Virus record (IMG/VR): IMGVR_UViG_3300025000_000053
Coordinates: 1-64,000 of that record
Direction: 5' to 3' (one strand)
Length of the DNA stretch: 64,000 nt
The translations under genes and the position numbers were made by a program. Under the pieces are notes generated by a model. The model saw only the letters and a list, made by a program, of their open reading frames with translations, did no database searches and was not told where the DNA came from. This document shows, in pieces, positions 3,314 through 54,137 of the stretch; position 1 is the stretch's first letter, and every line of letters starts with the position of its first letter.

Positions 3314-3493
3314 GATTTACTCAACTCCTCTCATATATTTTAAATTAATATAATGTTAAAAAATATAAAGAAAATGATTTTTTCGTATTTTTATTATATT
3401 TATTTATATATTATTTAAATATATTTAATAAAATAATCTTACTAATAAGGGTAAATAAAAATACTTATTAGATAGAAAGGATGAAAAAAATTA

Positions 3494-6439: not shown

Positions 6440-6736
6440 TCATTTAAAGTCACCCCAATTTAAAACTATATTTTTTATCACCTTAATAATATTATCAATT
6501 TTATTTTTTATTAAACCTTGTAACACTTCAAGTGTTGTTCGCACATCCCATTCATTGATATTAATTCTAGAACTTTGGTATAATATTTTAAATTCACTAG
6601 GACTAAGCCATTCATAACTTACAGTGTTATAAAATAAAAAACCTCCTGTCTTTTCCATATCTTCAACTAATTTATTTAAAGAATCTATTATTTCATAATT
6701 GAATATATGAGATTTATCAAAACCCTTGGATTTCAT
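6440..6736 (-). CDS. Hypothetical protein, divergent family A paralog
   Basis: MEKTGGFLF..EWLSPSEF...EWDVR. Confidence 0.7.
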   Translation of the reverse strand: MKSKGFDKSHIFNYEIIDSLNKLVEDMEKTGGFLFYNTVSYEWLSPSEFKILYQSSRININEWDVRTTLEVLQGLIKNKIDNIIKVIKNIVLNWGDFK

Positions 6737-7764
6737 TTAAATTTAACCTCCTTTTTAATTAAATTAATCTCATTCTTTTTTACACCATAATCTTTTCCTA
6801 AGCTATTATAATACAAATTTATCTTATTGACAAAAGGATTTAATTCTTCGAATAGGTTTTTATAAAACCATGGTTTTTTATCTTTATCTGAAAATATATT
6901 AATAACGACATTTCCTATTACACCTGATTGAATATAAAATTTTAATACATTAATAAACCCACACCCACATACTGCTGTATATATTTTATTACTTTTTTCT
7001 TTATCAAATACATTATAATATAAACCTAAAACATCAAATACACCTTCAGCTATATTCACAGTAATAGTTTTAGGTGAGAGTAAATCAATAGTATTAGGAA
7101 TCGAATAAAACTTTCTAGTATTATCTAGATTTTTATATATGCTGTATTTAAAGTACCTTTTATATTTTCCACTGGTATCTCTAAATACAATGTGTTCATT
7201 CTTAGCTGATAAGAATCCTACATATTTATTATGTAATAAACTGGCTTGTTCTTTATTAGTTGTTATGGTTTTAATATTATTATGTCTAAGAAATTCTCCA
7301 AAATTGAATACTACTTTTAATTTAATAAATTCCTCTTCAGTAATATTTATACCAAGTCTATTCTCAATATATTCTTTCTTCTCTTTCACTAATTCTTTTA
7401 ATACTGATAGTGGTATTTTAAAATCAAAAATATTATTTTTTATACCCAATGTCTTATTAATTTTTCCTATAGTTTCTTTATTATAAGATAATAATTTACT
7501 ATTAATCTGTAAATCATTAATCCTAAATGTTCTCAATATAGATGGAGTCATAACACCTGATATATCACATAAGAAACAATGGAAAATAATGGGTGTATTT
7601 GTGTTCAATTCAATTTTTATAAAGAAGTGAGCACTTGTGCTATTCTTTATACTATCACCACAAAAAGGACAACGAATCACTATTTGTGATTCGTTGACAC
7701 TTTTCGAAGAATGCACACTAAGTAATTTATTTCTTATTTTTAATTTAAAAGAATAATTATCCAT
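6733..7764 (-). CDS. DNA primase (zinc-binding + TOPRIM, T4 gp61-like)
   Basis: CPFCGDS...CFLC zinc ribbon; IAEGVFD and SDKD TOPRIM motifs. Confidence 0.8.
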   Translation of the reverse strand: MDNYSFKLKIRNKLLSVHSSKSVNESQIVIRCPFCGDSIKNSTSAHFFIKIELNTNTPIIFHCFLCDISGVMTPSILRTFRINDLQINSKLLSYNKETIGKINKTLGIKNNIFDFKIPLSVLKELVKEKKEYIENRLGINITEEEFIKLKVVFNFGEFLRHNNIKTITTNKEQASLLHNKYVGFLSAKNEHIVFRDTSGKYKRYFKYSIYKNLDNTRKFYSIPNTIDLLSPKTITVNIAEGVFDVLGLYYNVFDKEKSNKIYTAVCGCGFINVLKFYIQSGVIGNVVINIFSDKDKKPWFYKNLFEELNPFVNKINLYYNSLGKDYGVKKNEINLIKKEVKFK

Positions 7765-7776
7765 ATAAAAAACCTC

Positions 7777-9315
7777 TTATAGTTGATTTAAGAAACTTAA
7801 GAATTCATCAGACACAACATCTTGGTTGATTTCAAGTTTTTCACCAAGTTTATCTAGATGATCATAATCAACAATAGTAAATGTTGAATTTAAAATAGTT
7901 GATAATAAATTTAAAATCAAATTAGATTTCTTTATTTCTTCAAGAGTTGAATATTTGTCTTGTATCAATGATTGATACAATGGTGTTTCTTCTAATTTAT
8001 TTAAAAATTTTGTGTTTTGAATAGTACGAGTATTTAAACGACCCTCAATATTTCCACTTATAATTTGCGGAAGATACAAACCACCCTGAATTTGTAATCT
8101 TCTCTTCAGCAATATAACAAGAATTATATATTGCTTTCTTGTTAACAAATTTAAATCTCTATATCCACCAAAATATTTGGCATAGAAATAATGAACCAAT
8201 TGTTTTTGAAATTTATTTTTCTTATGAAATTTCTTATAGAAAGTAATTTCATCTTTAGTAATCTTAACACCAATTTTTTTCTTAATTTTTTTAATTGTGC
8301 TTTTGATATTTACTTCAGATAATATTATCAATGATTCATCTATTTTATTAGAGTTCATTTCAAACTTATCTAAACCACTTAAACCATCTTCACCACTTTT
8401 ATCCGCACTTAATTCAACGAGATTAACTTTATAGTTTTTCTTAATAACAAAATAAAGTTGTTTCTCTAATATAAAAGAATTAAAATTAACAATGTTTTTA
8501 TTAAAAACATATTTAAACATAGTTTCAGTTATGATATTCTTTTTCAATAAACTGTTAAGATAAATTAATGGATCAACACCAAATATTTCTTGTTGTTCCC
8601 ACATTGGTTTATTGGAGGATAAATTCTTATTTATTTTAGCTGATACTGTCACCATTAATTTATTATAAATATTAATACCGTTACCATACAATTCAAATAA
8701 ACCTTTATAAAAAGTATAAATGTAATCAACATCTTTCTTAATGTTATTCACATTAATATATTGAAATACTACTGGAATCATTATTTTAATAGACATCGAA
8801 ATCATCATCATTATCTTGGCATGTTCATTCGTTATCTCTAATGACTCACTATACTTCTTTTTATCATTACTAGTCAAATCAATATAATAATTATCTTCAA
8901 CCATTTTGATAATCTTTTCTTTCATACTATCAGTAAATAATATACCATATAAAAGTTTAATAAAAGTTTTAGGTTTTTTAACAGGTTTAGTTTTATCATC
9001 AATAAAATATTTGAGTTTAAAGTATGACATTAATAATTCATTATTAGTATCATAAAATTTAATAAAATAATTCAAATAATGAATTATACCTTTTTCATTC
9101 TTAATTATACCATTTTCATTTTTTTTATTGGTATTATTAAGTTGATTAACATATGATTCTTTCTTAATAATAAAAACATTCAATGTACTGGCACTATCTT
9201 TTTTAAATATTTTATCAAATGGGATTATTATTAATTTCCCATCACACTTGATGATATTATCTTCTTCTTCGGGCTCCCATTCATCTACTCTTATTAAGTC
9301 GGTAACACAATCCAT
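7777..9315 (-). CDS. Non-virion RNAP promoter-specificity (sigma-like) subunit, AR9 gp226-like
   Basis: Blocks IPFDKIFKKD..NVFIIKKESY, IYNKL, LSGLDKFEMN..DESLIILSEVNIKSTIKKIKKK resemble AR9 gp226 as recalled; two genes from GroEL as in AR9 (gp226/gp228); early motifs upstream. Confidence 0.75.
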   Translation of the reverse strand: MDCVTDLIRVDEWEPEEEDNIIKCDGKLIIIPFDKIFKKDSASTLNVFIIKKESYVNQLNNTNKKNENGIIKNEKGIIHYLNYFIKFYDTNNELLMSYFKLKYFIDDKTKPVKKPKTFIKLLYGILFTDSMKEKIIKMVEDNYYIDLTSNDKKKYSESLEITNEHAKIMMMISMSIKIMIPVVFQYINVNNIKKDVDYIYTFYKGLFELYGNGINIYNKLMVTVSAKINKNLSSNKPMWEQQEIFGVDPLIYLNSLLKKNIITETMFKYVFNKNIVNFNSFILEKQLYFVIKKNYKVNLVELSADKSGEDGLSGLDKFEMNSNKIDESLIILSEVNIKSTIKKIKKKIGVKITKDEITFYKKFHKKNKFQKQLVHYFYAKYFGGYRDLNLLTRKQYIILVILLKRRLQIQGGLYLPQIISGNIEGRLNTRTIQNTKFLNKLEETPLYQSLIQDKYSTLEEIKKSNLILNLLSTILNSTFTIVDYDHLDKLGEKLEINQDVVSDEFLSFLNQL

Positions 9316-9432
9316 TATTAATATCCCACCCCCTAAAAAATACTCTCCGCTTCTGATATGTATTCTCTATTTCTATATTAATATAATATATAATTCATTT
9401 TATCTTATAATATATAGTTTAGGATGGGATAT

Positions 9433-10206
9433 CTATATTTTAGATTTTGTTACATTGGATTTCTTAGCCTTAATTTTACTTATAGGTTTAATTTTATTAA
9501 TAGCTGATTTTTTTACTCCTGATATTTTATCAATAACATTTTTAATCTTACTTTCATTTTTTTTCTTTTCTATAGTTTCTTTCTTACGTTTAATTTCATT
9601 ATTAGCATTCTTTATCTCAATCTTGATTTGATTAATATCACGAATAGACTTATTCAAATCACCTTTATTTAATTTTTTAGAATGAGAATTAAGATAAGAT
9701 TTTGATAAATATTTATTTCTATTTATTAATATATGAAAACCAATAAAATATATTGATTTTTCAAAACTTATAATTTCTCCTGGATTTCTTATTACAGGAT
9801 TATTTTTAATAACATCATTACCAAATTTATTACTAAGAAAATCAATTAATAAATCAAACTGATTAAAAGCATATGCAAAAGTAAAAGTAAAACTTGGTGA
9901 ATTTGAAAAGAATCTAACAAAATAATGGTCTATTGTTACCTCTCTTTTAAAATCTTCATCTTCCATAGTAAATGATACTACTACATCATATGAGTTATTT
10001 CTTTCAGATTCACTATGTAAAATAAAATGAAGAAGATAATCGTCTTTATCTCTATAAATAGTTGGTTCATTAATTTTTTTATTCTTTATTAATGAATAGT
10101 ATCTTCTATTAAGGTCATCCTTAATAAGTTGTCTATTCGGAATTGCATTACTACCTTTACCCATGGGATTGTCGATAAAATCTTTTAATGTCTGTAGTAT
10201 GAACAA
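9433..10206 (-). CDS. Hypothetical protein with basic C-terminal tail
   Basis: 257-aa ORF between GroEL and the sigma-like gene. Confidence 0.75.
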   Translation of the reverse strand: MFILQTLKDFIDNPMGKGSNAIPNRQLIKDDLNRRYYSLIKNKKINEPTIYRDKDDYLLHFILHSESERNNSYDVVVSFTMEDEDFKREVTIDHYFVRFFSNSPSFTFTFAYAFNQFDLLIDFLSNKFGNDVIKNNPVIRNPGEIISFEKSIYFIGFHILINRNKYLSKSYLNSHSKKLNKGDLNKSIRDINQIKIEIKNANNEIKRKKETIEKKKNESKIKNVIDKISGVKKSAINKIKPISKIKAKKSNVTKSKI

Positions 10207-10292: not shown

Positions 10293-11987
10293 CTAATGTT
10301 CCCTGTTAGTAATCATAATAGATATATATTGGTTACTGGATAGCAATAAAGATATTATAGATGTTGCAGCTTTTAAAATTTCAACATCCGTTTGACAAGA
10401 ATTAATAATATCTTTAGATAAACACTCATTAACCAAATCCCAACAAATCTTTCCACTAATACATGACTCAATTAATAAGTCAATTGAAAAATTAGCTTTA
10501 CCCTTAAATTTATTATCCATCACTTTACTGAATACTTCAACAAAAGCTTTTCTTAATAATTTTAAAAACCTTTTTTCAGTATCATTAAAATCAGTACACT
10601 CATTTAATAATTCATCTATTACAATCGGTATAATTAAATTACCACCAATATTATATCCATATTTAAATGCTGATTCACATGCTTTTACAGCATCTTCAAC
10701 CAAATCATAATTAGCAGTTTTTTCTAATGAAGAGTTACCACCAACATTTATTACTCCCATTTTACAAGAAAGTTTAGATACTCTTTGTTTTAAGTCATAA
10801 ATTTGACTATTAACAATATTTAAATTTTGATTAGTTTCTTCAACTTCTTTAAGTTTAGCAAGAGCATCATTTAAATATATATCATATGTGGTTTGTTTTA
10901 AAGAATTAAAACCTTTAATAACAGTTGCTTTACTTCCAATTGAAATTTTATCAACTTGCCCAATAAAATATTTGAAATAATCATCTTCTTTATTTTCTAA
11001 ATCAAATAAAGTATTTTCACCAATTAACATACCACCAGTCAACATACAAAAATCATTATAAAATAATTGTTGTAAATTATTAAATAATCCAACCCTTGTA
11101 TAAACAGTTCTACTAGTTCCAGTTGATCTAAATTCTATATTTGCTGTTTGAGAAATAAATTTTAATAACATTTGGTCATAATGTGGAGCTATTACAACAA
11201 CCCTTCTATCAGTTTTAATACCTAAATCAATTACTTTAGATATAATTTTATCAAAATGTGTTTTTTCAAGTTTATGATCAAACATAACGATTAAGGGATT
11301 TTCAATTTCACATATTCCATTTTCATTTTCAGCATATATACTATCTAAATAAGTTATATTAGCTTTATAACCTTCAATAATCTCACATGAAGTTATATTT
11401 GTTTTTGAAGGAGAAAATTCAATACTTGGATTTTTTGTTTCTTTATATATTGTATGGATTATATCTGACAGGGTATTATCACCATTAGTTGAAATCATTG
11501 CCAATTGATAGATCTCTTGATAATCATTATCCTTGGTAATTTTAACCGAAGATTGTAATATTTTATCTGTAATCATTTTAACACAAACAGATAAAATGTT
11601 AATAAAATCCCTAGGTCTTATTTTTTTTAATTCTGTATCTGAATCTAAAAGATTCAATATTGAATTGGCAGCAACTATTGATGATGAACTACCATCACCA
11701 ACTTTAATTACAACTTGTGATGCTATATTGATTAATAATTGTTTAATATTATTATCAATATTATTATCAGAATTGATATTTTTTAATATTTGCCAACCAT
11801 CTTTAGTAATATGCATTTCTCCGAATTTCTCGATTATTGTATTAGACCCATATGGTCCTAAACTTTTTTGTACAGCAGATGAAACTTTATCAAAAATCAT
11901 ATGAATACGTTGTTTAAAATCATCTTCACTAATAATATTCCAATTATTTGTTTCCTCAAAAGTAACCATAACTTTTCCTACCTCCAT
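10293..11987 (-). CDS. groEL: Phage GroEL-like chaperonin
   Basis: SLGPYG, ITKDGW, VGDGSSS, VINVGG, VEDAVKA motifs; no GroES seen in window. Confidence 0.92.
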   Translation of the reverse strand: MEVGKVMVTFEETNNWNIISEDDFKQRIHMIFDKVSSAVQKSLGPYGSNTIIEKFGEMHITKDGWQILKNINSDNNIDNNIKQLLINIASQVVIKVGDGSSSSIVAANSILNLLDSDTELKKIRPRDFINILSVCVKMITDKILQSSVKITKDNDYQEIYQLAMISTNGDNTLSDIIHTIYKETKNPSIEFSPSKTNITSCEIIEGYKANITYLDSIYAENENGICEIENPLIVMFDHKLEKTHFDKIISKVIDLGIKTDRRVVVIAPHYDQMLLKFISQTANIEFRSTGTSRTVYTRVGLFNNLQQLFYNDFCMLTGGMLIGENTLFDLENKEDDYFKYFIGQVDKISIGSKATVIKGFNSLKQTTYDIYLNDALAKLKEVEETNQNLNIVNSQIYDLKQRVSKLSCKMGVINVGGNSSLEKTANYDLVEDAVKACESAFKYGYNIGGNLIIPIVIDELLNECTDFNDTEKRFLKLLRKAFVEVFSKVMDNKFKGKANFSIDLLIESCISGKICWDLVNECLSKDIINSCQTDVEILKAATSIISLLLSSNQYISIMITNREH

Positions 11988-12048
11988 TTTTATTCTTTTA
12001 GTCTTTAGAAATATGTTGTTTGTGTAGTTGTTTTTAATATTTTAGGGT

Positions 12049-15936: not shown

Positions 15937-16131
15937 TCGTTTAAATATTTCTATATTATTATCTTTCCAATCTTTTATAAATAAACTTTTATCTATTTTA
16001 GATATATTAATAACCTCCTTATCATAAATTTTAATAAAGAATTAATATTTTGTTATTTGAATTCTTATTTTTTATTTTAATTGAAAAATTGCCTATAGAA
16101 CAATTAATTAAAAAATTGACATTGAAAGGTT

Positions 16132-16657: not shown

Positions 16658-16667
16658 TATATATTAT
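16658..16667 (+). promoter_or_regulatory. Early-type promoter TATATATTAT upstream of nvRNAP beta-prime (representative of ~14 sites)
   Basis: Same 10-mer upstream of accessory genes and the sigma-like gene, on the coding strand. Confidence 0.65.
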
Positions 16668-16720
16668 TAATAGAGAAAAAACAAATAAATAATTTATACT
16701 AAAGAAAGGTGTGACTGTAT

Positions 16721-17520
16721 TTGGAAAATAACATAAAAGAAATTATTGATTTATTAAGTAAAAGGGTATTTATTATTTCTGATATTATGGAAAGTAGGGA
16801 AACATTCAATGAGAATCTTGAAAACATTTATGACTATTTAAAACAAGGTTTCGAAATTAAAGAATTAAGAACTTGTCCAACCTATTTTAGATTTAAAGAA
16901 ACAACTGAAATTCATGCTTTACAATTAAGACATTTCCTTACCAATTTAATGTTTTGGGAACCATTGATGAGACTTGATGTTTCAGATAAATTAGATGAAA
17001 CTTATATAATTGATTGTACTAAAATGTCAACTAAGTTAATTAAGAATTATATAGATAATAAAATTGTTATACCATATAAAAGGATAGTTAATAATAAGAA
17101 AATGAATAAAGTTATTCATGATATGATTTATAATTTATCAAGAATATCAACAGATTTCAATATTATACTTGGTATGAGTATTAATATTGAAACCTTTATT
17201 GATGTTGCTAAAAGAAATCCAAGATTTAATGAAATTATTAGAACACAGTTGGATGAAAATATGCAACCAACTGAGATTGAAGAATATCTAGATAAATTAA
17301 TGCATGAACAAATAGAGATACTAAAAAATGATGAAAAAGATAATTTATTAAAACCAATACTTAAAGCAGGTGCAGGTATAAAAAGTAAACAATTAGCAGA
17401 GTTCTCAATTTCAGGCGGGTTAAAACCGAATCTCAGTGGTACTACAATACCTATCCCAATTAATACTAATTATGTAGTCGGTGGACTAAGAAATATATCT
17501 AATTATTATATAGATTCCCT
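16721..17520 (+). CDS. RNAP beta-prime C-terminal subunit (probably non-virion), exon 1; join(16721..17520,18695..19901), 668 aa
   Basis: GGLKPNLSG..PINTNYVVGGL..YYIDSL joins GGRKSL..NSGHFAR, the bridge-helix region; early motif at 16658. Confidence 0.88.
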
Positions 17521-18694
17521 AAATTACATTGGGGCTTAGTATAGTAATATACTTCGAACAACTTCTTTAATTGTCGGGGAAGCTCTAAGAGCCTAAAACT
17601 ACCAAGCTATAATAGTGATATTATGGTGGCTTAATCTAATCAATTAAGATACGGTAACAAGGTTTTAGGATTGAGTAATCCGCAGCTAAGATTCTTTACC
17701 TTAATAAAAAAATTAGAATAAAAAATATTGGGTTGAAATTGGAGGTGAAGTAATGAATGATAAATATTATGCTCGAAAAATGTTAATAATAATTAGACTT
17801 AAACCTACAATTTATAGAACTATTTATATTAATAATAATCCTACTAGGTATGAAGTTAGTAATTACGGTGATATTAGAAATAGTAAAACTAATTTGATTA
17901 TGAGACCTACTACTGATAATAAAGGATATATGAGGATTTGTTTAACTATTAATGGTAAAAAGATTACAAAAAAAATTCATAGATTAGTAGCAGAATGTTT
18001 TATTCATAAAAAATATAGTTTTCAAAATCAAGTTAATCATAAAAATAGGATTAGAAATGATAATTATGTATGTAATTTAGAATGGGTTACAGCTAAACAA
18101 AATCAGGAACATTCATATTTAGTTGGAGGACCAAGAAAAGTTAAAAAAGGTGAAAAGATGTTTAACGCTAAACACTATGAAATAGATATAATAAAAGTAT
18201 GTGAACTTTTAGAAAGAAAATTTAAATCAAAAGTAATTAATGAAATAACTGGTGTAAATAAACATGTTATAAATAAAATAAAAGAAGGTAAACTCTGGAA
18301 ACATATTTCAAAAGACTTTAATATACCTAGTCCTCGACAAAAAGAAATATATAGCTATAAATTAAAAGAAAGAATAAAAGAATTACTAATATTAAAACAT
18401 ACTTCAACCCAAATAATTAATATTTTAGATTTAGAATATAGTCAACCATATTATTCTTTAATCTTCAATATTAAGAATAAAATGAAAAAAGGTAAAGAAT
18501 AAAGTTCAACGACTATCCTTTAGCTTTGAAATAAGCATTAGGAGTAGGGCTCAAGTGAGTGGGTGAAAATCCCTTAAATCGAAATAGGAAGCATCTTTAA
18601 TAATAAAGATGATGATATAGTCTGGTATCCTAAGGAAAGCTTAGGGAAGTTCATAGGAGAACTGTATAGACTAACAATCTATATGAACTTTACG
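17521..18694 (+). mobile_element. Group I intron 2 (1174 nt) with HNH endonuclease ORF in P6
   Basis: P1 CCCU|AA..UUGGGG with U.G pair; conserved core; terminal G 18694; splicing restores CT|A Leu codon and frame. Confidence 0.93.
17753..18502 (+). CDS. Intron-encoded NUMOD4-HNH homing endonuclease (I-HmuI-like)
   Basis: YEVSNYG, IHRLVAECFI, VNHKN..N...NLEWVT; GGAGGTG RBS. Confidence 0.92.
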   Translation: MNDKYYARKMLIIIRLKPTIYRTIYINNNPTRYEVSNYGDIRNSKTNLIMRPTTDNKGYMRICLTINGKKITKKIHRLVAECFIHKKYSFQNQVNHKNRIRNDNYVCNLEWVTAKQNQEHSYLVGGPRKVKKGEKMFNAKHYEIDIIKVCELLERKFKSKVINEITGVNKHVINKIKEGKLWKHISKDFNIPSPRQKEIYSYKLKERIKELLILKHTSTQIINILDLEYSQPYYSLIFNIKNKMKKGKE

Positions 18695-19901
18695 AGGTGG
18701 AAGAAAATCTTTAATTATGAGTAAACTTGAGATGGGGAATTCTGGACATTTCGCAAGAATGGTCATGTTACTTGTTTCAAGTATTAATTTATCAAAAACT
18801 GTTGATTCATGTAATAGTGTACATCCAATAAAAATTGAACTATCTTCTAAAGAACATTTGATAAGAATGAGAGGTAGATATTACAGGACTATGTATTCTA
18901 GGAATTATCAATTGTTACGAGGAGATGAATATAATTTAATTAATGAAACTATTTTTGTTAAATCGCCTGCTACATGTGCATGTAAAGATGGTATATGTAA
19001 AATGTGTTATGGTGATTTATCTTATATAAATAAAGATATTACTATAGGTGCATTTGCTGGTACAAAAATTACTGAACCCGTATCACAAAATATTCTATCA
19101 TCTAAACACTTATTAACAACTAAATCACAAAAAATAGAATTCAATGAAGAATTCTATAAGTTTTTTAATATAAGTGGTAATGAAATCATTATTAATTCAA
19201 ATGAAGATAATGATGATTTAGATTTAGATGATTATACCTTACTTATAATTAAAAGTAATATTAAAACAATAGCAGATTATGATGATAATGATATGGAATT
19301 TAATGAATATGTAAATCTATTCCATGTATATAATAAGAAAACTGATGAAATGATAGAAATAAAAGAAACTGAAGAAAAAGATTTATATATATCTCCTGAA
19401 TTAAGAAAATTATTTAAGAAAAAAAGTAAGAAAGAAGTTTATGAGATTGATTTTAAAACTCTTGATGATGATAATAGAATATTCGTTATAGAAGTACTTA
19501 ATAATGAATTAACTAGACCTCTGTATGATATTATAAGGTTAATTGATAGAGTTGATTATAGAATCATACATTGGAACTGTGTAACAATTGATCAAATGTG
19601 TCAAAAGATGTTAGACTTAATAATAGAGTCTGAAATTAATTCAGATTCAGTTCATGGTGAATTAATACTAACACCATTACTAAGAGATAAAGACAATATA
19701 TTAGAAAGACCTAAATTCAACAGATATTTTAATAATGATGATGGATATCAAATATTAACAGTTAAAGCTGCTTTAGAGAAACATCCATCAGTATTAGTTG
19801 GCTTATCATTCCAAGCACTTGATAGACAATTAACAAACCCATTAACATTTAGAAAGAAAGAAAGTTCATTTATTGATCCTTTCTTTAAAGAAAGACCATA
19901 A
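18695..19901 (+). CDS. RNAP beta-prime C-terminal subunit, exon 2
   Basis: Zn site CACKDGICKMCYG; trigger-loop GAFAGTKITEPVSQNILSSKH; SVLVGLSFQ. Confidence 0.88.
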
Positions 19902-21827: not shown

Positions 21828-23786
21828 ATGAATGAGTTAAAAAAATTAGAATTACCAATTCATAATTATAGGGATGAAATTTTATCAGCTGTTAAAGAAA
21901 ATCCTGTTGTGATTATTACAGCTGAAACGGGTGCAGGTAAATCAACTCAAGTACCCCAATTCCTTATGGAAGAGGGATATAGGGTAGTTGTAACACAACC
22001 TAGAAGAATTAGTTGTACAACTTTAGCTTCAAGGGTAAGTGATGAGATTGGTTGTGAACTTGGAACTATAGTTGGATATCGTACAGCATATGATAGAAAA
22101 TGTAATGATGATACTGAAATATTATTTTGTACGGATGGTCTTCAACTTGTTCGTGAAATAAATAATAATGGCTTAACAGATGTTCTTATAATAGATGAAG
22201 TCCATGAATGGAATATTAATATTGAAACTTTAGTAGCATGGACTCATAAACAAATAGAAGAAGGATGGTCTATAAAAGTTATTTTAATGAGTGCTACACT
22301 TGAATCTAATGAATTGGCATTATTTTATGGTGAAGATACACCTATTATAAAAGTACCTGGGAGACTTTTTAATGTAACAAGTCAAGAAGATTCACACTAT
22401 AGATTAATTTATAATATTGAAAACCTTGTTAAAGAAGGTCGTAATGTTCTCGTATTCTTACCAGGTAAAAAAGAAATCGAAGAAACTTGTGATGAGTTAA
22501 AATATTCTCAAGCAATAGTTTTACCCCTTCATGCTGAACTTGATTTAACTGAACAAGAAAAATGTTTTTTAACTTATGAACAACCTAAAGTTGTAGTTGC
22601 TACGAATGTTGCTCAGACTTCTATAACAATTCCAGATATTGATGCAGTTGTTGATTCTGGAGTAGAAAGAAGGGTTGAGCTCGTCGATAATATAGAAGGT
22701 TTATATTTAAAAGATATTAGTCAAGCGGACTGTTTACAACGTAAAGGTAGAGCTGGAAGAGTAAAAGAAGGTATTTATATACTTTGCTCGGATGTATCAT
22801 TTAAAGAACGTCCAGTTTTCTCTATATCTGAGATAAATAGATCTAGATTAGATCAATTATTTTTACGCCTTGCTGTTGTAGGCATTGATGCAACAAAACT
22901 AGAATTTTTCCATCAACCAAATATAGAAGATCTACTTGAAGCTAAAAGAACTCTCCATGTTTTAGGTGCCATGTTAGATGATAAAGTAACCACTATCGGT
23001 AGACTCATGGGAAAATTACCAGTATCAGTTCATATAGCTAGAATGATTGTTGAAGCCGATAAACTTGGAGTTGTTGATGATGTAATAACAATTGCATCTA
23101 TATTGGAAACATACACTGGAACTCTTCGTGATAGAAATGGTAGATGGTTATCTTTTACATCAGAACGTAAAAGTGATTTATTAGTAGAACTCGATCTATG
23201 GAATTTAGCACAAGGTAAATTAGCAAAAGACCTTCATGAATTCGGTATATTTAAAAAATCTTATTATAAAGCAAGAGAAATTCGTAATAAACTATATAAA
23301 TCACTAAATGGATTAGTACAATTTGGCTCTAACGGTAAACGTGAATCTATTATGCAATCATGTGTTGCTGGTATGATAGATCATGTATATTTTAATAGTT
23401 TCATCGGATACCAAAATAGTAAAGATACCATTGGGCGTAATATATCGAAAGATAGTGTTACTAATATTTATGGTGGGAGTAAATTAATTGTAGGTCTACC
23501 AAAAGATATTCAATTTATTGGAAGATGGGGTAATAAATGTATTATAAATTTAGTTTCAATGTGTACGGAGATTGATGCAGAGCAATTAATTAAAGTAGCC
23601 CCACAGTTTATCCAAATTAAAGAGGGTATCAATCCTTTTTATAGTGTTGAACAAGATTCATGTTATTCAACAAAAAGAATTTTGTTTAATGATCAATTAA
23701 TTAAAGAAGAAATTGTTAAAAGTCCAGAACATGAAAAAGCAAGTGAACTTTTTATAAATTGGCTCGCTTGTAACATGGTTATATAA
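21828..23786 (+). CDS. HrpA/HrpB-like DEAH-box (DEVH) RNA helicase
   Basis: AETGAGKSTQVPQ, TQPRR, DEVHE, MSAT, ATNVAQTSITIP, QRKGRAGR, HA2-like GRLMGKLPV. Confidence 0.9.
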   Translation: MNELKKLELPIHNYRDEILSAVKENPVVIITAETGAGKSTQVPQFLMEEGYRVVVTQPRRISCTTLASRVSDEIGCELGTIVGYRTAYDRKCNDDTEILFCTDGLQLVREINNNGLTDVLIIDEVHEWNINIETLVAWTHKQIEEGWSIKVILMSATLESNELALFYGEDTPIIKVPGRLFNVTSQEDSHYRLIYNIENLVKEGRNVLVFLPGKKEIEETCDELKYSQAIVLPLHAELDLTEQEKCFLTYEQPKVVVATNVAQTSITIPDIDAVVDSGVERRVELVDNIEGLYLKDISQADCLQRKGRAGRVKEGIYILCSDVSFKERPVFSISEINRSRLDQLFLRLAVVGIDATKLEFFHQPNIEDLLEAKRTLHVLGAMLDDKVTTIGRLMGKLPVSVHIARMIVEADKLGVVDDVITIASILETYTGTLRDRNGRWLSFTSERKSDLLVELDLWNLAQGKLAKDLHEFGIFKKSYYKAREIRNKLYKSLNGLVQFGSNGKRESIMQSCVAGMIDHVYFNSFIGYQNSKDTIGRNISKDSVTNIYGGSKLIVGLPKDIQFIGRWGNKCIINLVSMCTEIDAEQLIKVAPQFIQIKEGINPFYSVEQDSCYSTKRILFNDQLIKEEIVKSPEHEKASELFINWLACNMVI

Positions 23787-23809: not shown

Positions 23810-24826
23810 ATGAATTTATCCTCTATAATAGTATACAATCAACAAATACAACTGAATGCCCGAAAATTTAATATTCAGGCAGGTGAAGACATTTTTCCAA
23901 TAATGTCTAAATCTCAATGGAAAGAACACTTAACTAATCTATTAAATGGTGCAAGAAATTTATCAGAAATTATAGATTTAAGTATTCTTCAGATTCCTCA
24001 ATTAGATTCAGAATTAATTGAGATAATAAAAGAATTTAATCCTGATTTTATTACAGTTGACAATAATATTCTACATATAGAATATGGTAAAGAAGATGAT
24101 AAATACTATTGTCGAACTAATGTTGACGAAAATTTTGCACGTAATACTATATTAGATAATATAGTATTACCTGGAGGTCGTATTGTTGAAATTTATTGTA
24201 ATAATATTTCAGCCAATAATTTTATAAATTTAGTAGAAAAAATCGAGGGTGAACGAATAAAAAGACGTTTATCTCAGATTTCAACTAAATATGAAAAATG
24301 GACATCTAAATTAGACAATGTGTTGGAATGGATACCAGAAATTGGTTCCAAAGTTGAAATTACACGTAAGGATAATGGAAAGGGTGAACCAATCAACGGT
24401 TTTATAACATTGAAAATGGAACACAATGGGTGGACAAAATTTATTACAGAAGATGATAGATATAAAGTGATTGTTGATACCCAAAGTATTATTGAACAAA
24501 TAATGAAATTATTTGTTGACGAGATTTTTACAATAAATAGAGAAGACCCATGGTACAAAAATGAAGGAAGCTTTTTTTCAAATTGGCGATTAACTGAATT
24601 GGGTCAACGATTGCTAGATAAATTTAATGAACTTGCTAATGTTGACTATATTGAAAACTTATCTATTAATAATATAATAGATAGGATTAATAATATTAAA
24701 GGTCTTATATCATCTACTAAAAATGAAATTGAATTTGGTGGAAAGGATAAAGCAATAAAAAATCTTAATAATTCTATAGAATTATTAAGAGATTCTTTTA
24801 ATGCAAGTAAATGTTATAAAAAATAA
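23810..24826 (+). CDS. Hypothetical protein, possibly the separated C-terminal part of the helicase
   Basis: 338-aa ORF directly downstream with own RBS. Confidence 0.65.
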   Translation: MNLSSIIVYNQQIQLNARKFNIQAGEDIFPIMSKSQWKEHLTNLLNGARNLSEIIDLSILQIPQLDSELIEIIKEFNPDFITVDNNILHIEYGKEDDKYYCRTNVDENFARNTILDNIVLPGGRIVEIYCNNISANNFINLVEKIEGERIKRRLSQISTKYEKWTSKLDNVLEWIPEIGSKVEITRKDNGKGEPINGFITLKMEHNGWTKFITEDDRYKVIVDTQSIIEQIMKLFVDEIFTINREDPWYKNEGSFFSNWRLTELGQRLLDKFNELANVDYIENLSINNIIDRINNIKGLISSTKNEIEFGGKDKAIKNLNNSIELLRDSFNASKCYKK

Positions 24827-32199: not shown

Positions 32200-32345
32200 A
32201 ATTATATAATCAACTCCTTTAAGTTATTTTATAGGTATTTTTAAATTATTGTTTTTGGTTGTTCATATAATTCTTATAAATAAAGTCTTTATTTGTAACA
32301 CAAACAAATATTTAAATGAATATTTATAAAGGAGTGAATTAATTT

Positions 32346-33899
32346 ATGAATATAAACATAGATAGAGTTTTATCTAATGTAAAAGTTAATACTATTAAAA
32401 AAGAGTTTACTATTTTAAAAGAAAACTATTCGGCTGTAAATTCAATTAATTTTTTAAAGTTTGTACGTTCCCAACCTATTGATACTATTTTTGAGAATTC
32501 TCAATATATATTTTCAGAATTAAGAGAAGGATATAAATTTTACAATAGAATTTTAAAATCCTTTGATTTATCATTAGAACAACTACAAGTTCAACAAAAT
32601 AAATTAAATGATTTTATAACTAAATGTAAAAATGAAAAATACAATAATAAAAATCATCTTATTTCACTTAATGAATCTATTGAGTTTATTAAATCGGAAA
32701 TACAATATAAAAATAGTTTTGAATATTTAAAAGAATCCATTATTTATGATATTCATTGTAATTATCTTCAGCCAGTATTGGAAAATAATATTAATGACAT
32801 AATGGATGAAATTATATTAGATATAAATTATGAGCCTGAACTTTTGTCTGATTATCAAGCTCTTATTCAAAATATAGAAAAAAATTATATATTAGTAACA
32901 GGAAAGAACTTTCCTTTAATTCTAACCAAAAACACTGTTCTTATTTTATCTATGGGTGGAATTATAGCTGGAACACTTCTTATATTAGTTTTATCAATAC
33001 CTTTGCTGATAGTTAATTCAATTATAGAAAAAAAATTAGATACTAAATATATTGAATCATATAAATATTGTATAAGGAAAGAAATATCAAGATTGAAATT
33101 ATCTAAAGAAGAGGATGTTAATAGAAAGAAAAATACTGATAAATATATTGACCAATTGGAATTGGCATATAAAAAATTAGATGAGTTTAAAGGTAGTAAT
33201 ATTATTAAAGAAAATACTGGTTCAGTAACAACTATAAATGAGGATGAAAATGATTTAACAACCACCATTTTAACTCAATTTATTGATACTTTAGTATTTG
33301 ATGAAGAAGAAGATGACGAAACTGAAGACATGCAAATTGAATTAGAAAATTTTAATATTTTAATTAGAAATATAAGAAAATTACAATCATTAAAAGAAAG
33401 AGAATATTTACAAGAAAGTTTAATTAATGATGCTAGTAGAAAGGTTGCTCATGCAGTTCGTTCTACAGGCAAATCTATAAGTAATGCTGGTACTAATGTT
33501 AAAAAATCAACTAATAATGTTGTAGATGCTTTTAATGATACAATTGATAAATATAGAAAAATGCAAGCAAATGAAAGAAGAAATAGAATTATTGAAGGTG
33601 GTTCTCAATTTACTTTAATGAAAATAATTAAATATGGTATTGCAGTTGGGGGAATTTGGGCTGTTTCACCAGCTTTAGCAGCTATAGGTTTATTGGCTTC
33701 AATTGCTCTTGATATTAGAGCTGATGATAAAGCAAGAAAAAAAATTCTTGATGACTTAGAAGATGAATTAAAAATAGTTGAAGCTAAAATAGAAGATTCT
33801 AGAAATGATGAACAAAAAGAAAAAAAATATCAATTAATGAGAATTAAAGGTAAATTAGAAAAAGATATTGCTCGAATTAAATACAGGTTAAATGATTAG
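32346..33899 (+). CDS. Probable head/inner virion protein
   Basis: Late motif 32303-32314; head module; two hydrophobic segments. Confidence 0.55.
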   Translation: MNINIDRVLSNVKVNTIKKEFTILKENYSAVNSINFLKFVRSQPIDTIFENSQYIFSELREGYKFYNRILKSFDLSLEQLQVQQNKLNDFITKCKNEKYNNKNHLISLNESIEFIKSEIQYKNSFEYLKESIIYDIHCNYLQPVLENNINDIMDEIILDINYEPELLSDYQALIQNIEKNYILVTGKNFPLILTKNTVLILSMGGIIAGTLLILVLSIPLLIVNSIIEKKLDTKYIESYKYCIRKEISRLKLSKEEDVNRKKNTDKYIDQLELAYKKLDEFKGSNIIKENTGSVTTINEDENDLTTTILTQFIDTLVFDEEEDDETEDMQIELENFNILIRNIRKLQSLKEREYLQESLINDASRKVAHAVRSTGKSISNAGTNVKKSTNNVVDAFNDTIDKYRKMQANERRNRIIEGGSQFTLMKIIKYGIAVGGIWAVSPALAAIGLLASIALDIRADDKARKKILDDLEDELKIVEAKIEDSRNDEQKEKKYQLMRIKGKLEKDIARIKYRLND

Positions 33900-33913: not shown

Positions 33914-34660
33914 ATGGATTTTTTTGATGTGTTATTAGAAGCTAAAAAATCTAAATCAACAAAAACACCATCTAAAAAAACTATTAAAGTAGATAGTCCT
34001 TCAAATAAAACTACTGATTACTCAGATGATGTTAAAATTGATAACAAAGACGATAGTAAAGATGATGACAGTAATAATAAAGATAATGATGTAACTGACT
34101 ATACAGATGATGAAAATAATAAAGATGATAATACAACAGATTACACATCAGAAGATGTACAAAAAGATCCAACTGATAATCCTGATGATAGCACAGATAC
34201 AACAGATGAAAATACTGATGATAATATAGATGGTACTAATGATTATACTGATGAAAATATGGATGACAATACAGATGATTCATCTGATGATACTGATAAT
34301 TCAGACTCAACTGATGAAAGTTCAGATGATGATAATAATGAAAAAATTAAAAATAATAGTTTATTAAAAGATTATTTAGATCTTTATTATTTAACAAAAA
34401 ATACTATTACTAAATTATCAAATTTAGATAAGAGCGATATAATACTAAATAAAGTTTCAACACAAGTTATTTCAAATTTAAATAAAATTCAAAATCAAAT
34501 ATTTAGTTTTATTTTATATAAGTTTTCAAAAAATAATTATATAAATAACCTATATCAATATAACTATTTTATTGAAGCCTTTAGAATTAATATTGAAATG
34601 GTAAAAAAAATAAGCTTTTTTGTGACCAATAAACAAAACAAATATATAAAAAATCAATGA
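33914..34660 (+). CDS. Acidic low-complexity protein, scaffold-like
   Basis: D/N/T-rich tract with repeated (T/N)DY(T/S); directly upstream of capsid gene. Confidence 0.55.
   Translation: MDFFDVLLEAKKSKSTKTPSKKTIKVDSPSNKTTDYSDDVKIDNKDDSKDDDSNNKDNDVTDYTDDENNKDDNTTDYTSEDVQKDPTDNPDDSTDTTDENTDDNIDGTNDYTDENMDDNTDDSSDDTDNSDSTDESSDDDNNEKIKNNSLLKDYLDLYYLTKNTITKLSNLDKSDIILNKVSTQVISNLNKIQNQIFSFILYKFSKNNYINNLYQYNYFIEAFRINIEMVKKISFFVTNKQNKYIKNQ
34637..34648 (+). promoter_or_regulatory. Late-type promoter of capsid gene (representative of 16 AACA-N6-TA sites)
   Basis: AACAAATATATA; matches the AR9 nvRNAP late consensus as recalled. Confidence 0.7.
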
Positions 34661-36383: not shown

Positions 36384-36483
36384 TACAAATATATAAAGAT
36401 TATAGGTTAATAACCTATAATCTTTATTATTTATTTCAAAGAACACTTTAGTAATATAAAACAATTGAAAGGATGGTTATAAA

Positions 36484-39737: not shown

Positions 39738-39884
39738 TAAATATATGATATACAACAATATATATGTTGACAAACCAAATATATAAATTAATAATATTAA
39801 AACTTATCTTTATAATAAAGATAAGTTTTAATATATTTTAACATCTCAATAAATCATATATATATATTAAGGAGGTTTTATCAT

Positions 39885-40529
39885 GTGAAGAAACCATATA
39901 TTTATGATTTAGAAACTAAGAATTTATCTTTTATACAAACGGCTAAAGATTTACATATACTTGGTATTAAGAATAATGTATTTTTTTTAAAGCTATATGA
40001 TAAATCTTTAAAGAAAGTTGATCCCCATTCACCATTTTTAACAGATGATCAAATTATTAAAATTATTAATGAGTGTATGATTAACCCTTGGTATTATTTA
40101 AGAGAGGTTGCAAGGATTCCAGATCAGGGTGGTCGTGGTATAAGTTACCAGTTAAATAGAGGTAATTTAGCATCTACTTGGTGTTATTTAAATGGTATAG
40201 ACGACTATTTAGTATTACCAAGACAAATAGGTAAAACACAAAGTAAACTATGTATAATAAATTGGACATTTTTACTAGGTACTACTAATTCACAATTTAT
40301 GTTTTTGAGTTTAGATCAAACGGCCGCTAATGAAAATCTTGATAGGTTAAAAAAACAAAGAGATTTATTACCTCCTTATTTACAATTTAAACTAGTAACT
40401 TCAGATGAAGGTAAAATTATTAAAGAAATTGATAATGTTAAAACTCTAGTTAACCCAGTTAATAATAATAAAATTGTAACTAAACCTTCTGCTAAATCAA
40501 CTGAAGCTGCTGAGAAAATAGGTAGGGGT
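39885..40529 (+). CDS. terL: Terminase large subunit, exon 1; join(39885..40529,40916..42334), 687 aa
   Basis: Walker A LPRQIGKT; spliced GRG|NTQPIQMYDE gives Walker B; late motif 39840-39851. Confidence 0.88.
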
Positions 40530-42334: not shown

Positions 42335-42415
42335 TAATATAATGTGTTATTTAACACATTATATTATTTTTTACTAATTTAGTAACATTGTTTTAATTAT
42401 GAATAAAAAAGGAGT

Positions 42416-44165: not shown

Positions 44166-44230
44166 TAAAAACATTAGGATAAGGTTGTGAATTTTTAATT
44201 CACTTCCTTATCCTAATTTTATTTTTTAAG

Positions 44231-44977: not shown

Positions 44978-45018
44978 TAATCAATGAGAACAATTAAATA
45001 AAAAAATTCACAAGGAGG

Positions 45019-54007: not shown

Positions 54008-54137
54008 TCAATTCACCACCAATTCAAATATTTTTTATTTAAAAATTTGTTACTAAAATAATTGAAAGCTATCATTTTGGTACTGGCTATATTATATGAA
54101 TTAATTAACAAAACACAATAATAAGGGGGTTGATATT

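What the first reader, a model, noticed from the sequence alone, without database searches (positions are those of the whole stretch)
7777..9315. AR9-type sigma-like subunit with AR9-type late promoters: is this a uracil-DNA phage?
Seen: AACA-N6-TA at 16 sites (+: 939, 16099, 32303, 34637, 36442, 39840, 42384, 44170, 44989, 54112; -: 2101, 3346, 12006, 16043, 32242, 54040). Established (recalled): AR9 nvRNAP reads this motif on the template strand and needs dU, with gp226 V206 excluding thymine. In my by-eye alignment the equivalent segment is SNKPMW, with Pro at that position. Inference: either the genome contains dU, or this is a T-tolerant version of the same promoter logic.
Basis: partly seen in the sequence, partly recalled or inferred. 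Interest (0 to 1): 0.6.

Follow-up and report, generated by a model that had tools for sequence, protein, structure and literature searches.

The report
AR9-type sigma subunit, thymine-DNA phage
The gene is a real relative of the phage AR9 promoter-recognition subunit and the AR9-type late promoters are real. However, the phage encodes its own thymidylate pathway and lacks the enzymes uracil-DNA phages use, so it most likely reads the same promoter on ordinary thymine DNA.

Summary
ORF 7777-9315(-) is an ortholog of AR9 gp226, the sigma-like subunit of the non-virion RNA polymerase. Support: phmmer to 7S01_A E=4e-14, Foldseek top hit 7S01_A E=4e-17, and the same primase/gp226/gp227/GroEL gene order.

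AACA-N6-TA is not enriched overall in the window (75 found, 102 expected). It is strongly and specifically enriched on the sense strand within 100 nt upstream of ORFs: 64 versus 20.5±4.5 genome-wide, and only at spacing 6. It sits mostly 30-50 nt before start codons and precedes virion-gene homologs. The same test on AR9 gives 78 versus 22. AR9's early box TATATATTAT is also conserved and precedes the gp226-like gene.

Pro237 does align with AR9 V206, but this column is hypervariable in about 120 environmental homologs.

The uracil-DNA reading is not supported. The 250-kb contig carries an operon of thymidylate kinase, deaminase and tandem ThyX. It has no homolog of the dTMP phosphatase, the dTTP pyrophosphatase or Ugi. 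All six cultured gp226 phages show the opposite pattern.

Most likely this is a natural thymine-compatible variant of AR9-type promoter recognition. It belongs to a large environmental clade in which 29 of 31 large genomes encode ThyX or ThyA.

The parts
7777..9315 (-). 512-aa ortholog of AR9 gp226, the sigma-like promoter-specificity subunit of the non-virion multisubunit RNA polymerase
   Evidence: phmmer to 7S01_A E=4.2e-14 over residues 28-483. phrog_25005 'RNA polymerase' E=1.9e-24. AF2 model pLDDT 84; Foldseek top hits 7s01_A E=3.9e-17 and 7um0_A, then phiKZ 8que_B E=7.5e-5. dN/dS 0.078 against the second-strain copy.
8599..8616 (-). Codons for S234-N-K-P237-M-W239, the segment equivalent to AR9 S203-D-V-V206-I-W208 (start of helix 2.1bis, the -10 base pocket)
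   Evidence: Alignments. In the model P237 lies at the N-terminus of helix 236-244.
9383..9414 (-). Two AR9-early-type promoter boxes (TATATATTAT cores at 9383-9390 and 9407-9414), 75 and 99 nt upstream of the gp226-like start codon
   Evidence: One box is conserved in the second strain. AR9 gp226 also has an annotated early promoter.
6733..7764 (-). DNA primase, homolog of AR9 gp225; syntenic neighbour
   Evidence: phrog_19847 E=6e-59; tblastn to AR9 193281-194243 E=3e-30.
9433..10206 (-). Homolog of AR9 gp227 (function unknown); syntenic neighbour
   Evidence: phrog_20045 E=8e-42; tblastn to AR9 E=7e-29.
10293..11987 (-). GroEL-like chaperonin, homolog of AR9 gp228; syntenic neighbour with a late-type promoter
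   Evidence: Pfam Cpn60_TCP1 E=1e-21; phrog_5725 E=4e-83.
12006..12017 (-). AACA-N6-TA site 30 nt upstream of the GroEL-like gene
   Evidence: conserved in the second strain.
3346..3357 (-). AACA-N6-TA site 44 nt upstream of the homolog of AR9 virion protein gp165
16043..16054 (-). AACA-N6-TA site 118 nt upstream of the called DNA polymerase ORF
   Evidence: the box is conserved between strains.
16099..16110 (+). AACA-N6-TA site 33 nt upstream of the homolog of AR9 virion protein gp153
   Evidence: conserved between strains.
16660..16691 (+). Early box (16660-16667) followed by a late box (16680-16691) upstream of the nvRNAP beta'-C gene
   Evidence: both boxes conserved between strains.
16721..19901 (+). 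nvRNAP beta'-C subunit (AR9 gp154 homolog) in two exons, 16721-17539 and 18717-19901. They are split by a probable group I intron that carries an HNH endonuclease ORF (17753-18502).
   Evidence: tblastn to AR9 128156-129688. Weak Intron_gpI halves at 17515-17751 and 18593-18644.
23772..23783 (+). AACA-N6-TA site 38 nt upstream of ORF 23810-24826
32242..32253 (-). AACA-N6-TA site 54 nt upstream of the prohead protease homolog (AR9 gp114)
32303..32314 (+). AACA-N6-TA site 43 nt upstream of ORF 32346-33899
34637..34648 (+). AACA-N6-TA site 40 nt upstream of the major head protein homolog (AR9 gp117)
36442..36453 (+). AACA-N6-TA site 42 nt upstream of ORF 36484-37722
39840..39851 (+). AACA-N6-TA site 45 nt upstream of terminase large subunit exon 1
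42384..42395 (+). AACA-N6-TA site 32 nt upstream of ORF 42416-43198
44170..44181 (+). AACA-N6-TA site 61 nt upstream of the homolog of AR9 virion protein gp125
44989..45000 (+). AACA-N6-TA site 30 nt upstream of the tail sheath homolog (AR9 gp126)
54040..54051 (-). AACA-N6-TA site 44 nt upstream of the DNA polymerase exonuclease-part homolog (AR9 gp132)
54112..54123 (+). AACA-N6-TA site 26 nt upstream of ORF 54138-55244

Best explanation
The window is the first 64 kb of an uncultivated AR9-like jumbo phage of about 228 kb from groundwater, GC 24.5%. ORF 7777-9315(-) is the ortholog of AR9 gp226. Like its AR9 counterpart it is preceded by early-type promoter boxes, which in AR9 are read by the injected virion RNA polymerase. 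It is inferred to join the phage's split beta/beta' non-virion RNA polymerase core and direct it to late promoters of the form aAACA-N6-TAa, about 30-50 nt before the start codons of virion and other late genes. By analogy with AR9 it would do this by reading the -11 to -8 tetranucleotide on the template strand. Unlike AR9, this phage most likely has ordinary thymine DNA. It encodes an early-promoter-driven operon of thymidylate kinase, CDA-family deaminase and tandem ThyX, and it has none of the known thymidine-removing enzymes. The polymerase would therefore read 3'-TTGT-5' rather than 3'-UUGU-5', using a remodelled 2.1bis helix and pocket (D204N, V206P, Y210Q in the sigma-like subunit; K375N in beta-N; the stacking Arg363 is kept). 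Shown here: homology, fold, synteny, motif enrichment and placement, and gene content. Inferred: thymine in the DNA, template-strand reading, and tolerance of thymine by the pocket.
For: Homology and fold. Synteny with AR9 gp225-228. All nvRNAP and vRNAP subunit homologs are present. Promoter motif: N6-specific and strand-specific enrichment, 64 against 20.5±4.5. Position 30-50 nt from starts. The motif and its one-base-shifted form are the two top dyads of an unbiased scan here, and AACA-N6-TA is the top dyad in AR9. The identical test on AR9 gives 78 against 22.1±4.9. The late motif alone precedes 15 homologs of AR9 virion or late genes; the early motif alone precedes none, but does precede homologs of two nvRNAP subunits (beta-C, beta'-N), ligase, gyrase A and NrnB (Fisher p=0.04). 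Boxes are conserved between two strains that are about 86% identical. The early box TATATATTAT occurs 47-49 times against about 2 expected. Thymine DNA: ThyX Pfam E=7e-31, deaminase E=3e-20, Tmk E=4e-16, adjacent to each other, with dN/dS 0.26-0.43 against a relative and early-type boxes upstream. No ThyA, dUTPase, Ugi, Dtm or Ham1-like Dtt. The six cultured gp226 phages have no ThyX, ThyA or Tmk. Dtm (AR9 gp151; characterised as the PBS1 enzyme) has homologs in the four others tested, at E 1e-60 to 1e-12. ThyX or ThyA is present in 29 of 31 large environmental relatives. In the gp226 tree the cultured phages lacking thymidylate synthase sit on one side of a single branch with 97% support. The cultured phages keep D-x-V-[IM]-W-x-[YF]; the window protein has N-K-P-M-W-E-Q.
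Against: There are no chemical data on the DNA and no RNA data; only DNA metagenome runs hold the sequence, so transcription starts are unverified. The ThyX is unusual: it is a tandem in which each half keeps only part of the catalytic motifs. It has no PDB match by single-sequence search and only moderate constraint (dN/dS 0.32). The deaminase could be a dCTP deaminase, as in PBS1 (PMC12697855), and thymidylate kinases often also accept dUMP. Ugi-type inhibitors are too small and divergent for absence to be shown. In AR9 the exclusion of T at -11 comes from the DNA backbone conformation, not from a single residue, so how T would fit there is unexplained. Pro keeps a C-beta and removes one of the main-chain N-H donors that contact the -10 base. 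The relative G004, used as a second example of the motif in a genome with a thymidylate synthase, carries ThyA plus a weak Dtm-like gene and might have hydroxymethyl-U rather than T.
Confidence: 0.7

Rival explanations
1. The phage has uracil DNA like AR9/PBS1, and its polymerase needs dU at -11 and -10. Under this reading the deaminase makes dUTP or dUMP, the kinase acts as a dUMP kinase, and the ThyX-like protein is inactive or does something else.
For: The sigma-like subunit is orthologous and the promoter consensus is identical. No dUTPase of either family is present. A CDA-family deaminase of the kind that is a dCTP deaminase in PBS1 and phiR1-37 is present. The ThyX halves are each degenerate.
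Against: ThyX and Tmk are absent from all six cultured gp226 phages and present here. Dtm has homologs in the four other cultured phages tested and none here, and the Ham1-like Dtt is absent. The two ThyX halves keep complementary motif sets (SQRY plus EDARYxLP in one; RHR plus AQxEIR in the other), and this arrangement is conserved in relatives and under purifying selection. The helix signature that is invariant in cultured gp226 phages is lost.
Confidence: 0.13
2. The DNA carries a modified thymine or another pyrimidine modification (for example a 5-hydroxymethyl-U derivative or a post-replicative modification), and the pocket is adapted to that base.
For: The pocket residues are remodelled and hypervariable across the clade. 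Some relatives carry ThyA homologs plus weak Dtm-like genes, a combination reminiscent of hydroxymethyl-U phages.
Against: This genome has ThyX, not a ThyA-family enzyme. To my knowledge the known pyrimidine hydroxymethylases are ThyA homologs. No Dtm-like gene is present. I did not scan systematically for modification enzymes.
Confidence: 0.1
3. The upstream AACA-N6-TA enrichment is not a promoter read by this protein. It would be a by-product of AT-rich leader composition, or a signal read by another factor.
For: The motif is short. Total occurrences in the window are below chance. No transcript data exist. 11 of the 26 AR9-homologous genes preceded only by a late motif are homologs of non-virion genes.
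Against: Enrichment is specific to spacing 6 and to the sense strand. It is positionally constrained and conserved between strains within diverging intergenic DNA. It is reproduced at the same strength in AR9, where the motif is experimentally established (PMC9209446).
Confidence: 0.05

Closest known systems
Bacillus phage AR9/PBS1 gp226 and its late promoters (PDB 7S01, 7UM0, 7UM1; PMC9209446, PMC5449584)
   Same: Orthologous protein with the same fold. Same gene neighbourhood (primase, gp226, gp227, GroEL). Early-type promoter upstream of the gene. Same late consensus AACA-N6-TA with equal enrichment. Same early box TATATATTAT. Split beta/beta' subunits interrupted by group I introns. W208 and beta-N R363 are conserved.
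   Different: About 23% identity. The helix 2.1bis signature is changed (D204N, V206P, Y210Q) and beta-N K375 is N. The genome encodes ThyX and Tmk and lacks Dtm and Ugi, so thymine DNA is the likely template.
Engineered AR9 gp226 V206G (PMC9209446)
   Same: An altered residue 206 gives a polymerase that accepts T at -10. This is the precedent for thymine tolerance in this pocket.
   Different: Here the residue is Pro, not Gly, and the surrounding helix is also changed. The AR9 mutant did not relieve the -11 requirement, which arises from the DNA conformation. A few environmental relatives do carry Gly naturally (L035, L044-46, L076).
Other cultured gp226 phages: Staphylococcus S6, Machias and MarsHill, Yersinia phiR1-37, Listeria LPJP1, Bacillus BpSp
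   Same: They carry gp226 homologs and two multisubunit RNA polymerases.
   Different: They all keep D-x-V-[IM]-W-x-[YF], carry a Dtm homolog, and lack ThyX, ThyA and Tmk. In the gp226 tree they fall on the other side of a supported branch from the window's clade.
PhiKZ nvRNAP subunit gp68 (PDB 8QUE, 7OGR)
   Same: It is the third-best structural match (E=7.5e-5). From my own knowledge, not tested here, phiKZ has thymine DNA and encodes ThyX. If so, a gp226/gp68-type subunit working on T-DNA has a precedent.
   Different: About 10% identity. From my own knowledge, phiKZ promoters have a different consensus.

Membership tests
AR9 gp226-type sigma-like subunit of the jumbo-phage non-virion RNAP | Significant sequence similarity to gp226 over most of its length | tested here: met
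   phmmer E=4.2e-14 over residues 28-483 against 16-442; phrog_25005 E=1.9e-24.
AR9 gp226-type sigma-like subunit of the jumbo-phage non-virion RNAP | Same fold as the solved gp226 | tested here: met
   AF2 model pLDDT 84. Foldseek top hit 7s01_A E=3.9e-17, TM 0.49/0.54; the high global rmsd reflects domain orientation.
AR9 gp226-type sigma-like subunit of the jumbo-phage non-virion RNAP | Genomic context: conserved neighbours and a complete split beta/beta' nvRNAP core in the genome | tested here: met
   Homologs of gp225, gp227 and gp228 flank the gene. Homologs of gp105, gp089, gp270 and gp154 are present.
AR9 gp226-type sigma-like subunit of the jumbo-phage non-virion RNAP | Helix 2.1bis signature of the uracil-reading group (D204, V206, aromatic residue at 210) | tested here: not met
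   N235, P237 and Q241 replace D204, V206 and Y210. All six cultured homologs keep the signature.
AR9 gp226-type sigma-like subunit of the jumbo-phage non-virion RNAP | Binds the core enzyme and recognises the template strand of the promoter | not testable with these tools
   This needs a reconstituted enzyme. No complex prediction was run.
AR9-type late promoter (5'-AACA-N6-TA-3', start at the A of TA) | Motif with fixed spacing enriched upstream of genes on the sense strand | tested here: met
   64 against 20.5±4.5, at N=6 only. One of the two top dyads, with its shifted form, in the unbiased scan. AR9 control 78 against 22.
AR9-type late promoter (5'-AACA-N6-TA-3', start at the A of TA) | Precedes late (virion) genes, while nvRNAP genes carry early promoters | tested here: met
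   The late motif alone precedes 15 homologs of AR9 virion or late genes and the early motif alone precedes none. The early motif precedes two nvRNAP subunit genes (beta-C, beta'-N) and the gp226-like gene; beta'-C has both boxes.
AR9-type late promoter (5'-AACA-N6-TA-3', start at the A of TA) | Transcripts start at the TA | not testable with these tools
   Only DNA runs, kept as contigs, hold the sequence.
Uracil-DNA (dU for dT) phages | No thymidylate synthase encoded | tested here: not met
   Tandem ThyX at genome 162550-163884(-), Pfam E=7e-31. Six cultured gp226 phages have neither ThyX nor ThyA.
Uracil-DNA (dU for dT) phages | A thymidine-nucleotide-removing enzyme (PBS1-type Dtm or phiR1-37-type Dtt) | tested here: not met
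   No Dtm match at E<=1, while four cultured phages match at 1e-60 to 1e-12. No Ham1-like match, while phiR1-37 matches. The DSS3_VP1-type Dtm was not tested.
Uracil-DNA (dU for dT) phages | CDA-family dCTP deaminase supplying dUTP | tested here: inconclusive
   A deaminase domain with HAE...PCxxC is present inside a 456-aa protein. Its substrate (dCMP or dCTP) cannot be told from sequence.
Uracil-DNA (dU for dT) phages | Uracil-DNA glycosylase inhibitor | tested here: inconclusive
   No match to AR9 Ugi at E<=10. Such small proteins diverge beyond detection.
Uracil-DNA (dU for dT) phages | dU replaces dT in virion DNA | not testable with these tools
   This needs LC-MS or UDG digestion of the DNA.

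The most novel reading that the evidence does not exclude
A large, uncultivated clade of AR9-like jumbo phages has thymine DNA. At least 160 gp226 homologs were found, and 29 of 31 near-complete genomes carry ThyX or ThyA. At least some members of the clade still use the AR9 late promoter AACA-N6-TA. They would therefore carry natural sigma-like subunits that read 3'-TTGT-5' on the template strand through a remodelled pocket. Uracil dependence of this promoter mechanism would then be a speciality of the cultured Bacillus, Staphylococcus, Listeria and Yersinia branch, not a property of the gp226 family.
Probability: 0.6. Interest if true: 0.65.

Novelty: new variant of a known kind. Interest (0 to 1): 0.55.

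Why it matters
AR9 gp226 is the only promoter-specificity factor known to read the -10 element on the template strand, and its mechanism has been explained as requiring uracil. A natural ortholog with the same promoter consensus in a genome equipped to make dTTP would separate template-strand reading from uracil dependence. It offers ready-made sequence variants, at positions 204, 206 and 210 of the sigma-like subunit and 375 of beta-N, for testing how the pocket accommodates the 5-methyl group at both -10 and -11. It also gives a simple gene-content rule for predicting dU against dT genomes among uncultivated jumbo phages: ThyX/ThyA plus Tmk on one side, Dtm/Dtt on the other.

Tried and rejected
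1. tblastn of the window protein against 50,697 phage records found nothing at E<=1e-3. The homology is too distant for that tool, and AR9 gp226 as query does not reach this clade either.
2. Pfam has no family for the protein.
3. Pfam NT5C (PF06941) as a probe for Dtm failed its positive control: AR9 was not detected. I replaced it with the AR9 gp151 protein.
4. phmmer of the ThyX against PDB gave no hit. I checked its motifs instead against canonical ThyX from relatives.
5. Rfam at gathering threshold on the whole window found nothing. Targeted searches then found the group I introns.
6. I looked for a link between the residue at position 206 and thymidylate synthase content or promoter type. 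None is simple: V occurs with ThyX (G007, G023-25), with ThyA (G010) and with neither (G031).
7. The search for RNA runs to map transcription starts found only DNA contigs from one groundwater study.
8. Read laying across the contig's internal junction found no bridging contig.
9. The careful tree did not finish in time, so the quick tree is reported.
10. I did not run the large representative protein search, because the word search and family scans settled the protein's identity.
Full report
**What the window is**

The window is the first 64 kb of a single 249,853-bp virus contig with GC 24.5%. The contig comes from groundwater metagenomes. Four DNA runs from one study hold it, and no RNA run does.

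tblastn of its ORFs against Bacillus phage AR9 (fetched) gives 80 hits. They cover the replication genes, both multisubunit RNA polymerases and the virion genes. This is an AR9-like jumbo phage.

The last 21.6 kb of the contig (228,254-249,853) is an 82-89% identical second version of the first 21.2 kb. The junction lies in a high-copy repeat, and no Logan contig bridges it. I read this as an assembly that runs on into a related strain, which would make the real genome about 228 kb. The second version is useful as a natural comparison.

**The protein**

ORF 7777-9315(-) encodes 512 aa.
- It has no Pfam family.
- It matches phrog_25005 'RNA polymerase' at E=1.9e-24.
- By phmmer it matches the solved AR9 gp226 chain 7S01_A at E=4.2e-14, over residues 28-483.
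- An AlphaFold2 model built on 36 homologs has pLDDT 84. Its best Foldseek matches are 7s01_A (E=3.9e-17) and 7um0_A, followed by the phiKZ nvRNAP subunit 8que_B (E=7.5e-5).
- Its neighbours are homologs of AR9 gp225 (primase), gp227 and gp228 (GroEL), in the same order and orientation as in AR9.
- Against the second-strain copy its dN/dS is 0.078.

This is an ortholog.

**The promoter motif**

They are 16 of 75 matches in the window, and shuffles give 101.6±10.3, so the motif alone is not over-represented. The signal is positional.
- On the sense strand within 100 nt upstream of ORFs there are 64 sites genome-wide, against 20.5±4.5 in shuffles. Only the six-base spacing stands out: 2.22/kb, against 0.6-1.6/kb at spacings 2-11, 0.73/kb on the antisense strand and 0.35-0.59/kb inside coding sequence.
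- In the window alone there are 18 such sites against 5.3±2.2.
- 39 of the 64 sites lie 30-50 nt before the start codon. 51 are followed by A, and a Shine-Dalgarno sequence follows.
- In a scan of every 4-mer/gap/2-mer dyad, AACA-N6-TA (z 7.5) and its one-base-shifted form AAAC-N7-TA (z 7.7) are the two top scorers, i.e. aAACA-N6-TA. The same scan puts AACA-N6-TA at the top in AR9.
- The identical enrichment test on AR9, where the motif is experimentally established, gives 78 against 22.1±4.9. This genome without its duplicated end gives 61 against 18.1±4.0.
- Among genes with AR9 homologs, the late motif alone precedes 15 homologs of AR9 virion or late genes. These include major head, sheath, prohead protease, terminase and vRNAP subunits.
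- The AR9 early box alone precedes no such gene. It does precede homologs of two nvRNAP subunits (beta-C, beta'-N), ligase, gyrase A and NrnB (Fisher p=0.04).
- The boxes upstream of the GroEL-like, gp153-like, DNA polymerase and beta'-C genes are conserved between the two strains.

Site 16043(-) is 118 nt from the called DNA polymerase start. Sites 939(+) and 2101(-) have no nearby ORF start.

**The early promoter**

De novo k-mer counting also finds TATATATTAT upstream of ORFs 47-49 times, against about 2 expected. This is the core of the early promoters annotated in AR9. Two copies lie 75 and 99 nt upstream of the gp226-like gene, at 9383-9390 and 9407-9414. AR9 gp226 likewise has an early promoter. 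The whole two-polymerase, two-promoter programme of AR9 appears to be conserved.

**The V206 position**

- T at -11 or -10 of the template inactivates AR9 promoters.
- C5 of the -10 uracil lies 3.9 Å from the C-beta of V206.
- V206G accepts T at -10.
- The valine is conserved in close homologs from dU phages.
- The -10 base stacks on beta-N R363 and hydrogen-bonds to K375 and to the main-chain N of V206 and I207.
- The -9 G stacks on Y210.
- Exclusion of T at -11 comes from the DNA backbone conformation.

In HMMER and MAFFT alignments P237 lies opposite V206, two residues before the nearly invariant Trp (116 of 118 sequences).

Across 118 metagenomic homologs and 79 IMG/VR loci, however, this column is hypervariable. 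It holds V, L, I, T, Q, P, A, G, S, K, D and M. The six cultured homologs (AR9, BpSp, LPJP1, Machias, S6, phiR1-37) all keep D-x-V-[IM]-W-x-[YF]. The window protein reads N-K-P-M-W-E-Q, and most of its clade reads N-x-x-[ILM]-W-[ED]-Q. In the beta-N homolog R363 is kept, but K375 is N.

So the pocket is remodelled as a whole. Pro alone proves nothing: it still has a C-beta, and it removes one main-chain N-H donor.

**Uracil or thymine?**

At genome 162550-166077(-) lie three adjacent genes.
- A thymidylate kinase (Pfam E=4e-16).
- A 456-aa protein with a CDA-family deaminase domain (E=3e-20; HAE...PCxxC present).
- A 444-aa tandem ThyX (E=7e-31, both halves over the Pfam cut-off).

Two early-type boxes precede the operon.

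The two ThyX halves keep complementary parts of the catalytic motifs. The N half has SQRY and EDARYxLP. The C half has RHR and AQxEIR. Two other tandem ThyX relatives that were aligned (G002, G005) show the same split. dN/dS against the ortholog in a related contig is 0.32, and 0.43 and 0.26 for the deaminase and the kinase.

The genome has no ThyA, no dUTPase of either family, and no match to AR9 Ugi.

PMC12697855 identifies the enzymes that remove thymidine nucleotides in dU phages. These are Dtm in PBS1 (AR9 gp151) and a Ham1-like Dtt in phiR1-37.
- AR9 gp151 finds homologs in BpSp, LPJP1, S6 and phiR1-37, at E 1e-60 to 1e-12. It finds nothing in this genome at E<=1.
- The Ham1 family is found in phiR1-37 but not here.
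- Conversely, none of the six cultured gp226 phages has ThyX, ThyA or Tmk.

The two gene sets are thus mutually exclusive, and this genome sits on the thymine side.

**The clade**

Of 31 large IMG/VR relatives, 22 have ThyX and 7 have ThyA, never both. Two have neither (G008, G031).

In a quick maximum-likelihood tree of the gp226 homologs, the cultured phages lacking thymidylate synthase sit on one side of a single branch (SH-aLRT 97). All 31 rows of the environmental clade (the window and 30 relatives) sit on the other. The window groups with L019, and then with ThyX and ThyA relatives.

The late motif is also strongly enriched in G004 (ThyA, Q at position 206; 57 against 14.4) and in G008 (no thymidylate synthase, G at 206; 48 against 18). 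In G007 (canonical ThyX, V at 206) the enriched dyad is GACA-N6-TA. G031 shows only ACA-type signals.

G003, G004 and G013 carry ThyA plus weak Dtm-like hits. Their base chemistry is therefore less clear, and G004 is not a clean second example.

**Conclusion**

The protein and promoters are of the AR9 type. The uracil-DNA reading is unlikely (about 0.13). The best reading (about 0.7) is a natural thymine-compatible variant of AR9-type promoter recognition.

Three things remain inferred and need biochemistry: thymine in the DNA, template-strand reading, and the way two 5-methyl groups fit the pocket.

Noticed in passing
window 1-21181 versus genome 228254-249853 (L014, L015): The end of the contig is an 82-89% identical second version of its start. 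It includes a second gp226-like gene (503 aa, also with Pro at the V206 position). The junction lies in a high-copy repeat (depth 280-710 against about 10-30), and no Logan contig bridges it. This is probably an assembly that runs on into a related strain, so the real genome would be about 228 kb.
   Followed up: partly
window 40520-40867 (+); also 17515-17751 with 18593-18644; repeat copies at 1-232, 18495-18692, 48217-48468, 51657-51850 and many more outside the window: A family of repeats of about 200-350 nt lies between the pieces of split genes (terminase, beta'-C, DNA polymerase and others). The copy in the terminase gene scores 53.8 bits for Rfam Intron_gpI, above the cut-off. The copy in beta'-C is split around an HNH endonuclease ORF (17753-18502). 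The phage appears to carry a dozen or more related group I introns, as AR9 does.
   Followed up: partly
genome 162550-163884 (-) = L011:2550-3884: The ThyX is a tandem fusion in which each half keeps a complementary subset of the catalytic motifs. The N half has SQRY and EDARYxLP but has lost RHR. The C half has RHR and AQxEIR but has lost SQRY. The pattern is conserved in G002 and G005 and looks like a pseudo-heterodimer.
   Followed up: partly
genome 163925-165295 (-) = L011:3925-5295: The deaminase domain (residues 139-254) is embedded in a 456-aa protein. The N-terminal region is Cys-rich and repeated, and a long C-terminal extension looks partly like a coiled coil. Its substrate (dCMP or dCTP) is unknown.
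   Followed up: no
IMG/VR relatives G001-G031 (loci L019-L094): ThyX (22 genomes) and ThyA (7 genomes) are mutually exclusive and have swapped several times on the gp226 tree. G008 (L044; D-R-G-H-W) and G031 (L094; N-A-V-I-W) have neither enzyme and no Dtm hit. The ThyA-bearing G003, G004 and G013 have weak Dtm-like genes, which might indicate hydroxymethyl-U-type DNA.
   Followed up: partly
G007 (L105-L109, L125-L129): In this relative, which has a canonical single-domain ThyX and Val at position 206, the enriched upstream dyad is GACA-N6-TA(A) (27 against a median of 5), not AACA-N6-TA. The -11 position of the late promoter has changed.
   Followed up: partly
genome-wide upstream regions: A 20-nt element, GGAAGTTCATAAGAGAACTG, recurs upstream of 13-14 ORFs. 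It may be part of the intron or homing-endonuclease repeats.
   Followed up: no
whole genome versus AR9 189695-192867: At E<=1e-5 there is no tblastn hit to AR9's class I ribonucleotide reductase genes (NrdE, NrdF, NrdI). ARAGORN finds no tRNA gene in the window.
   Followed up: no
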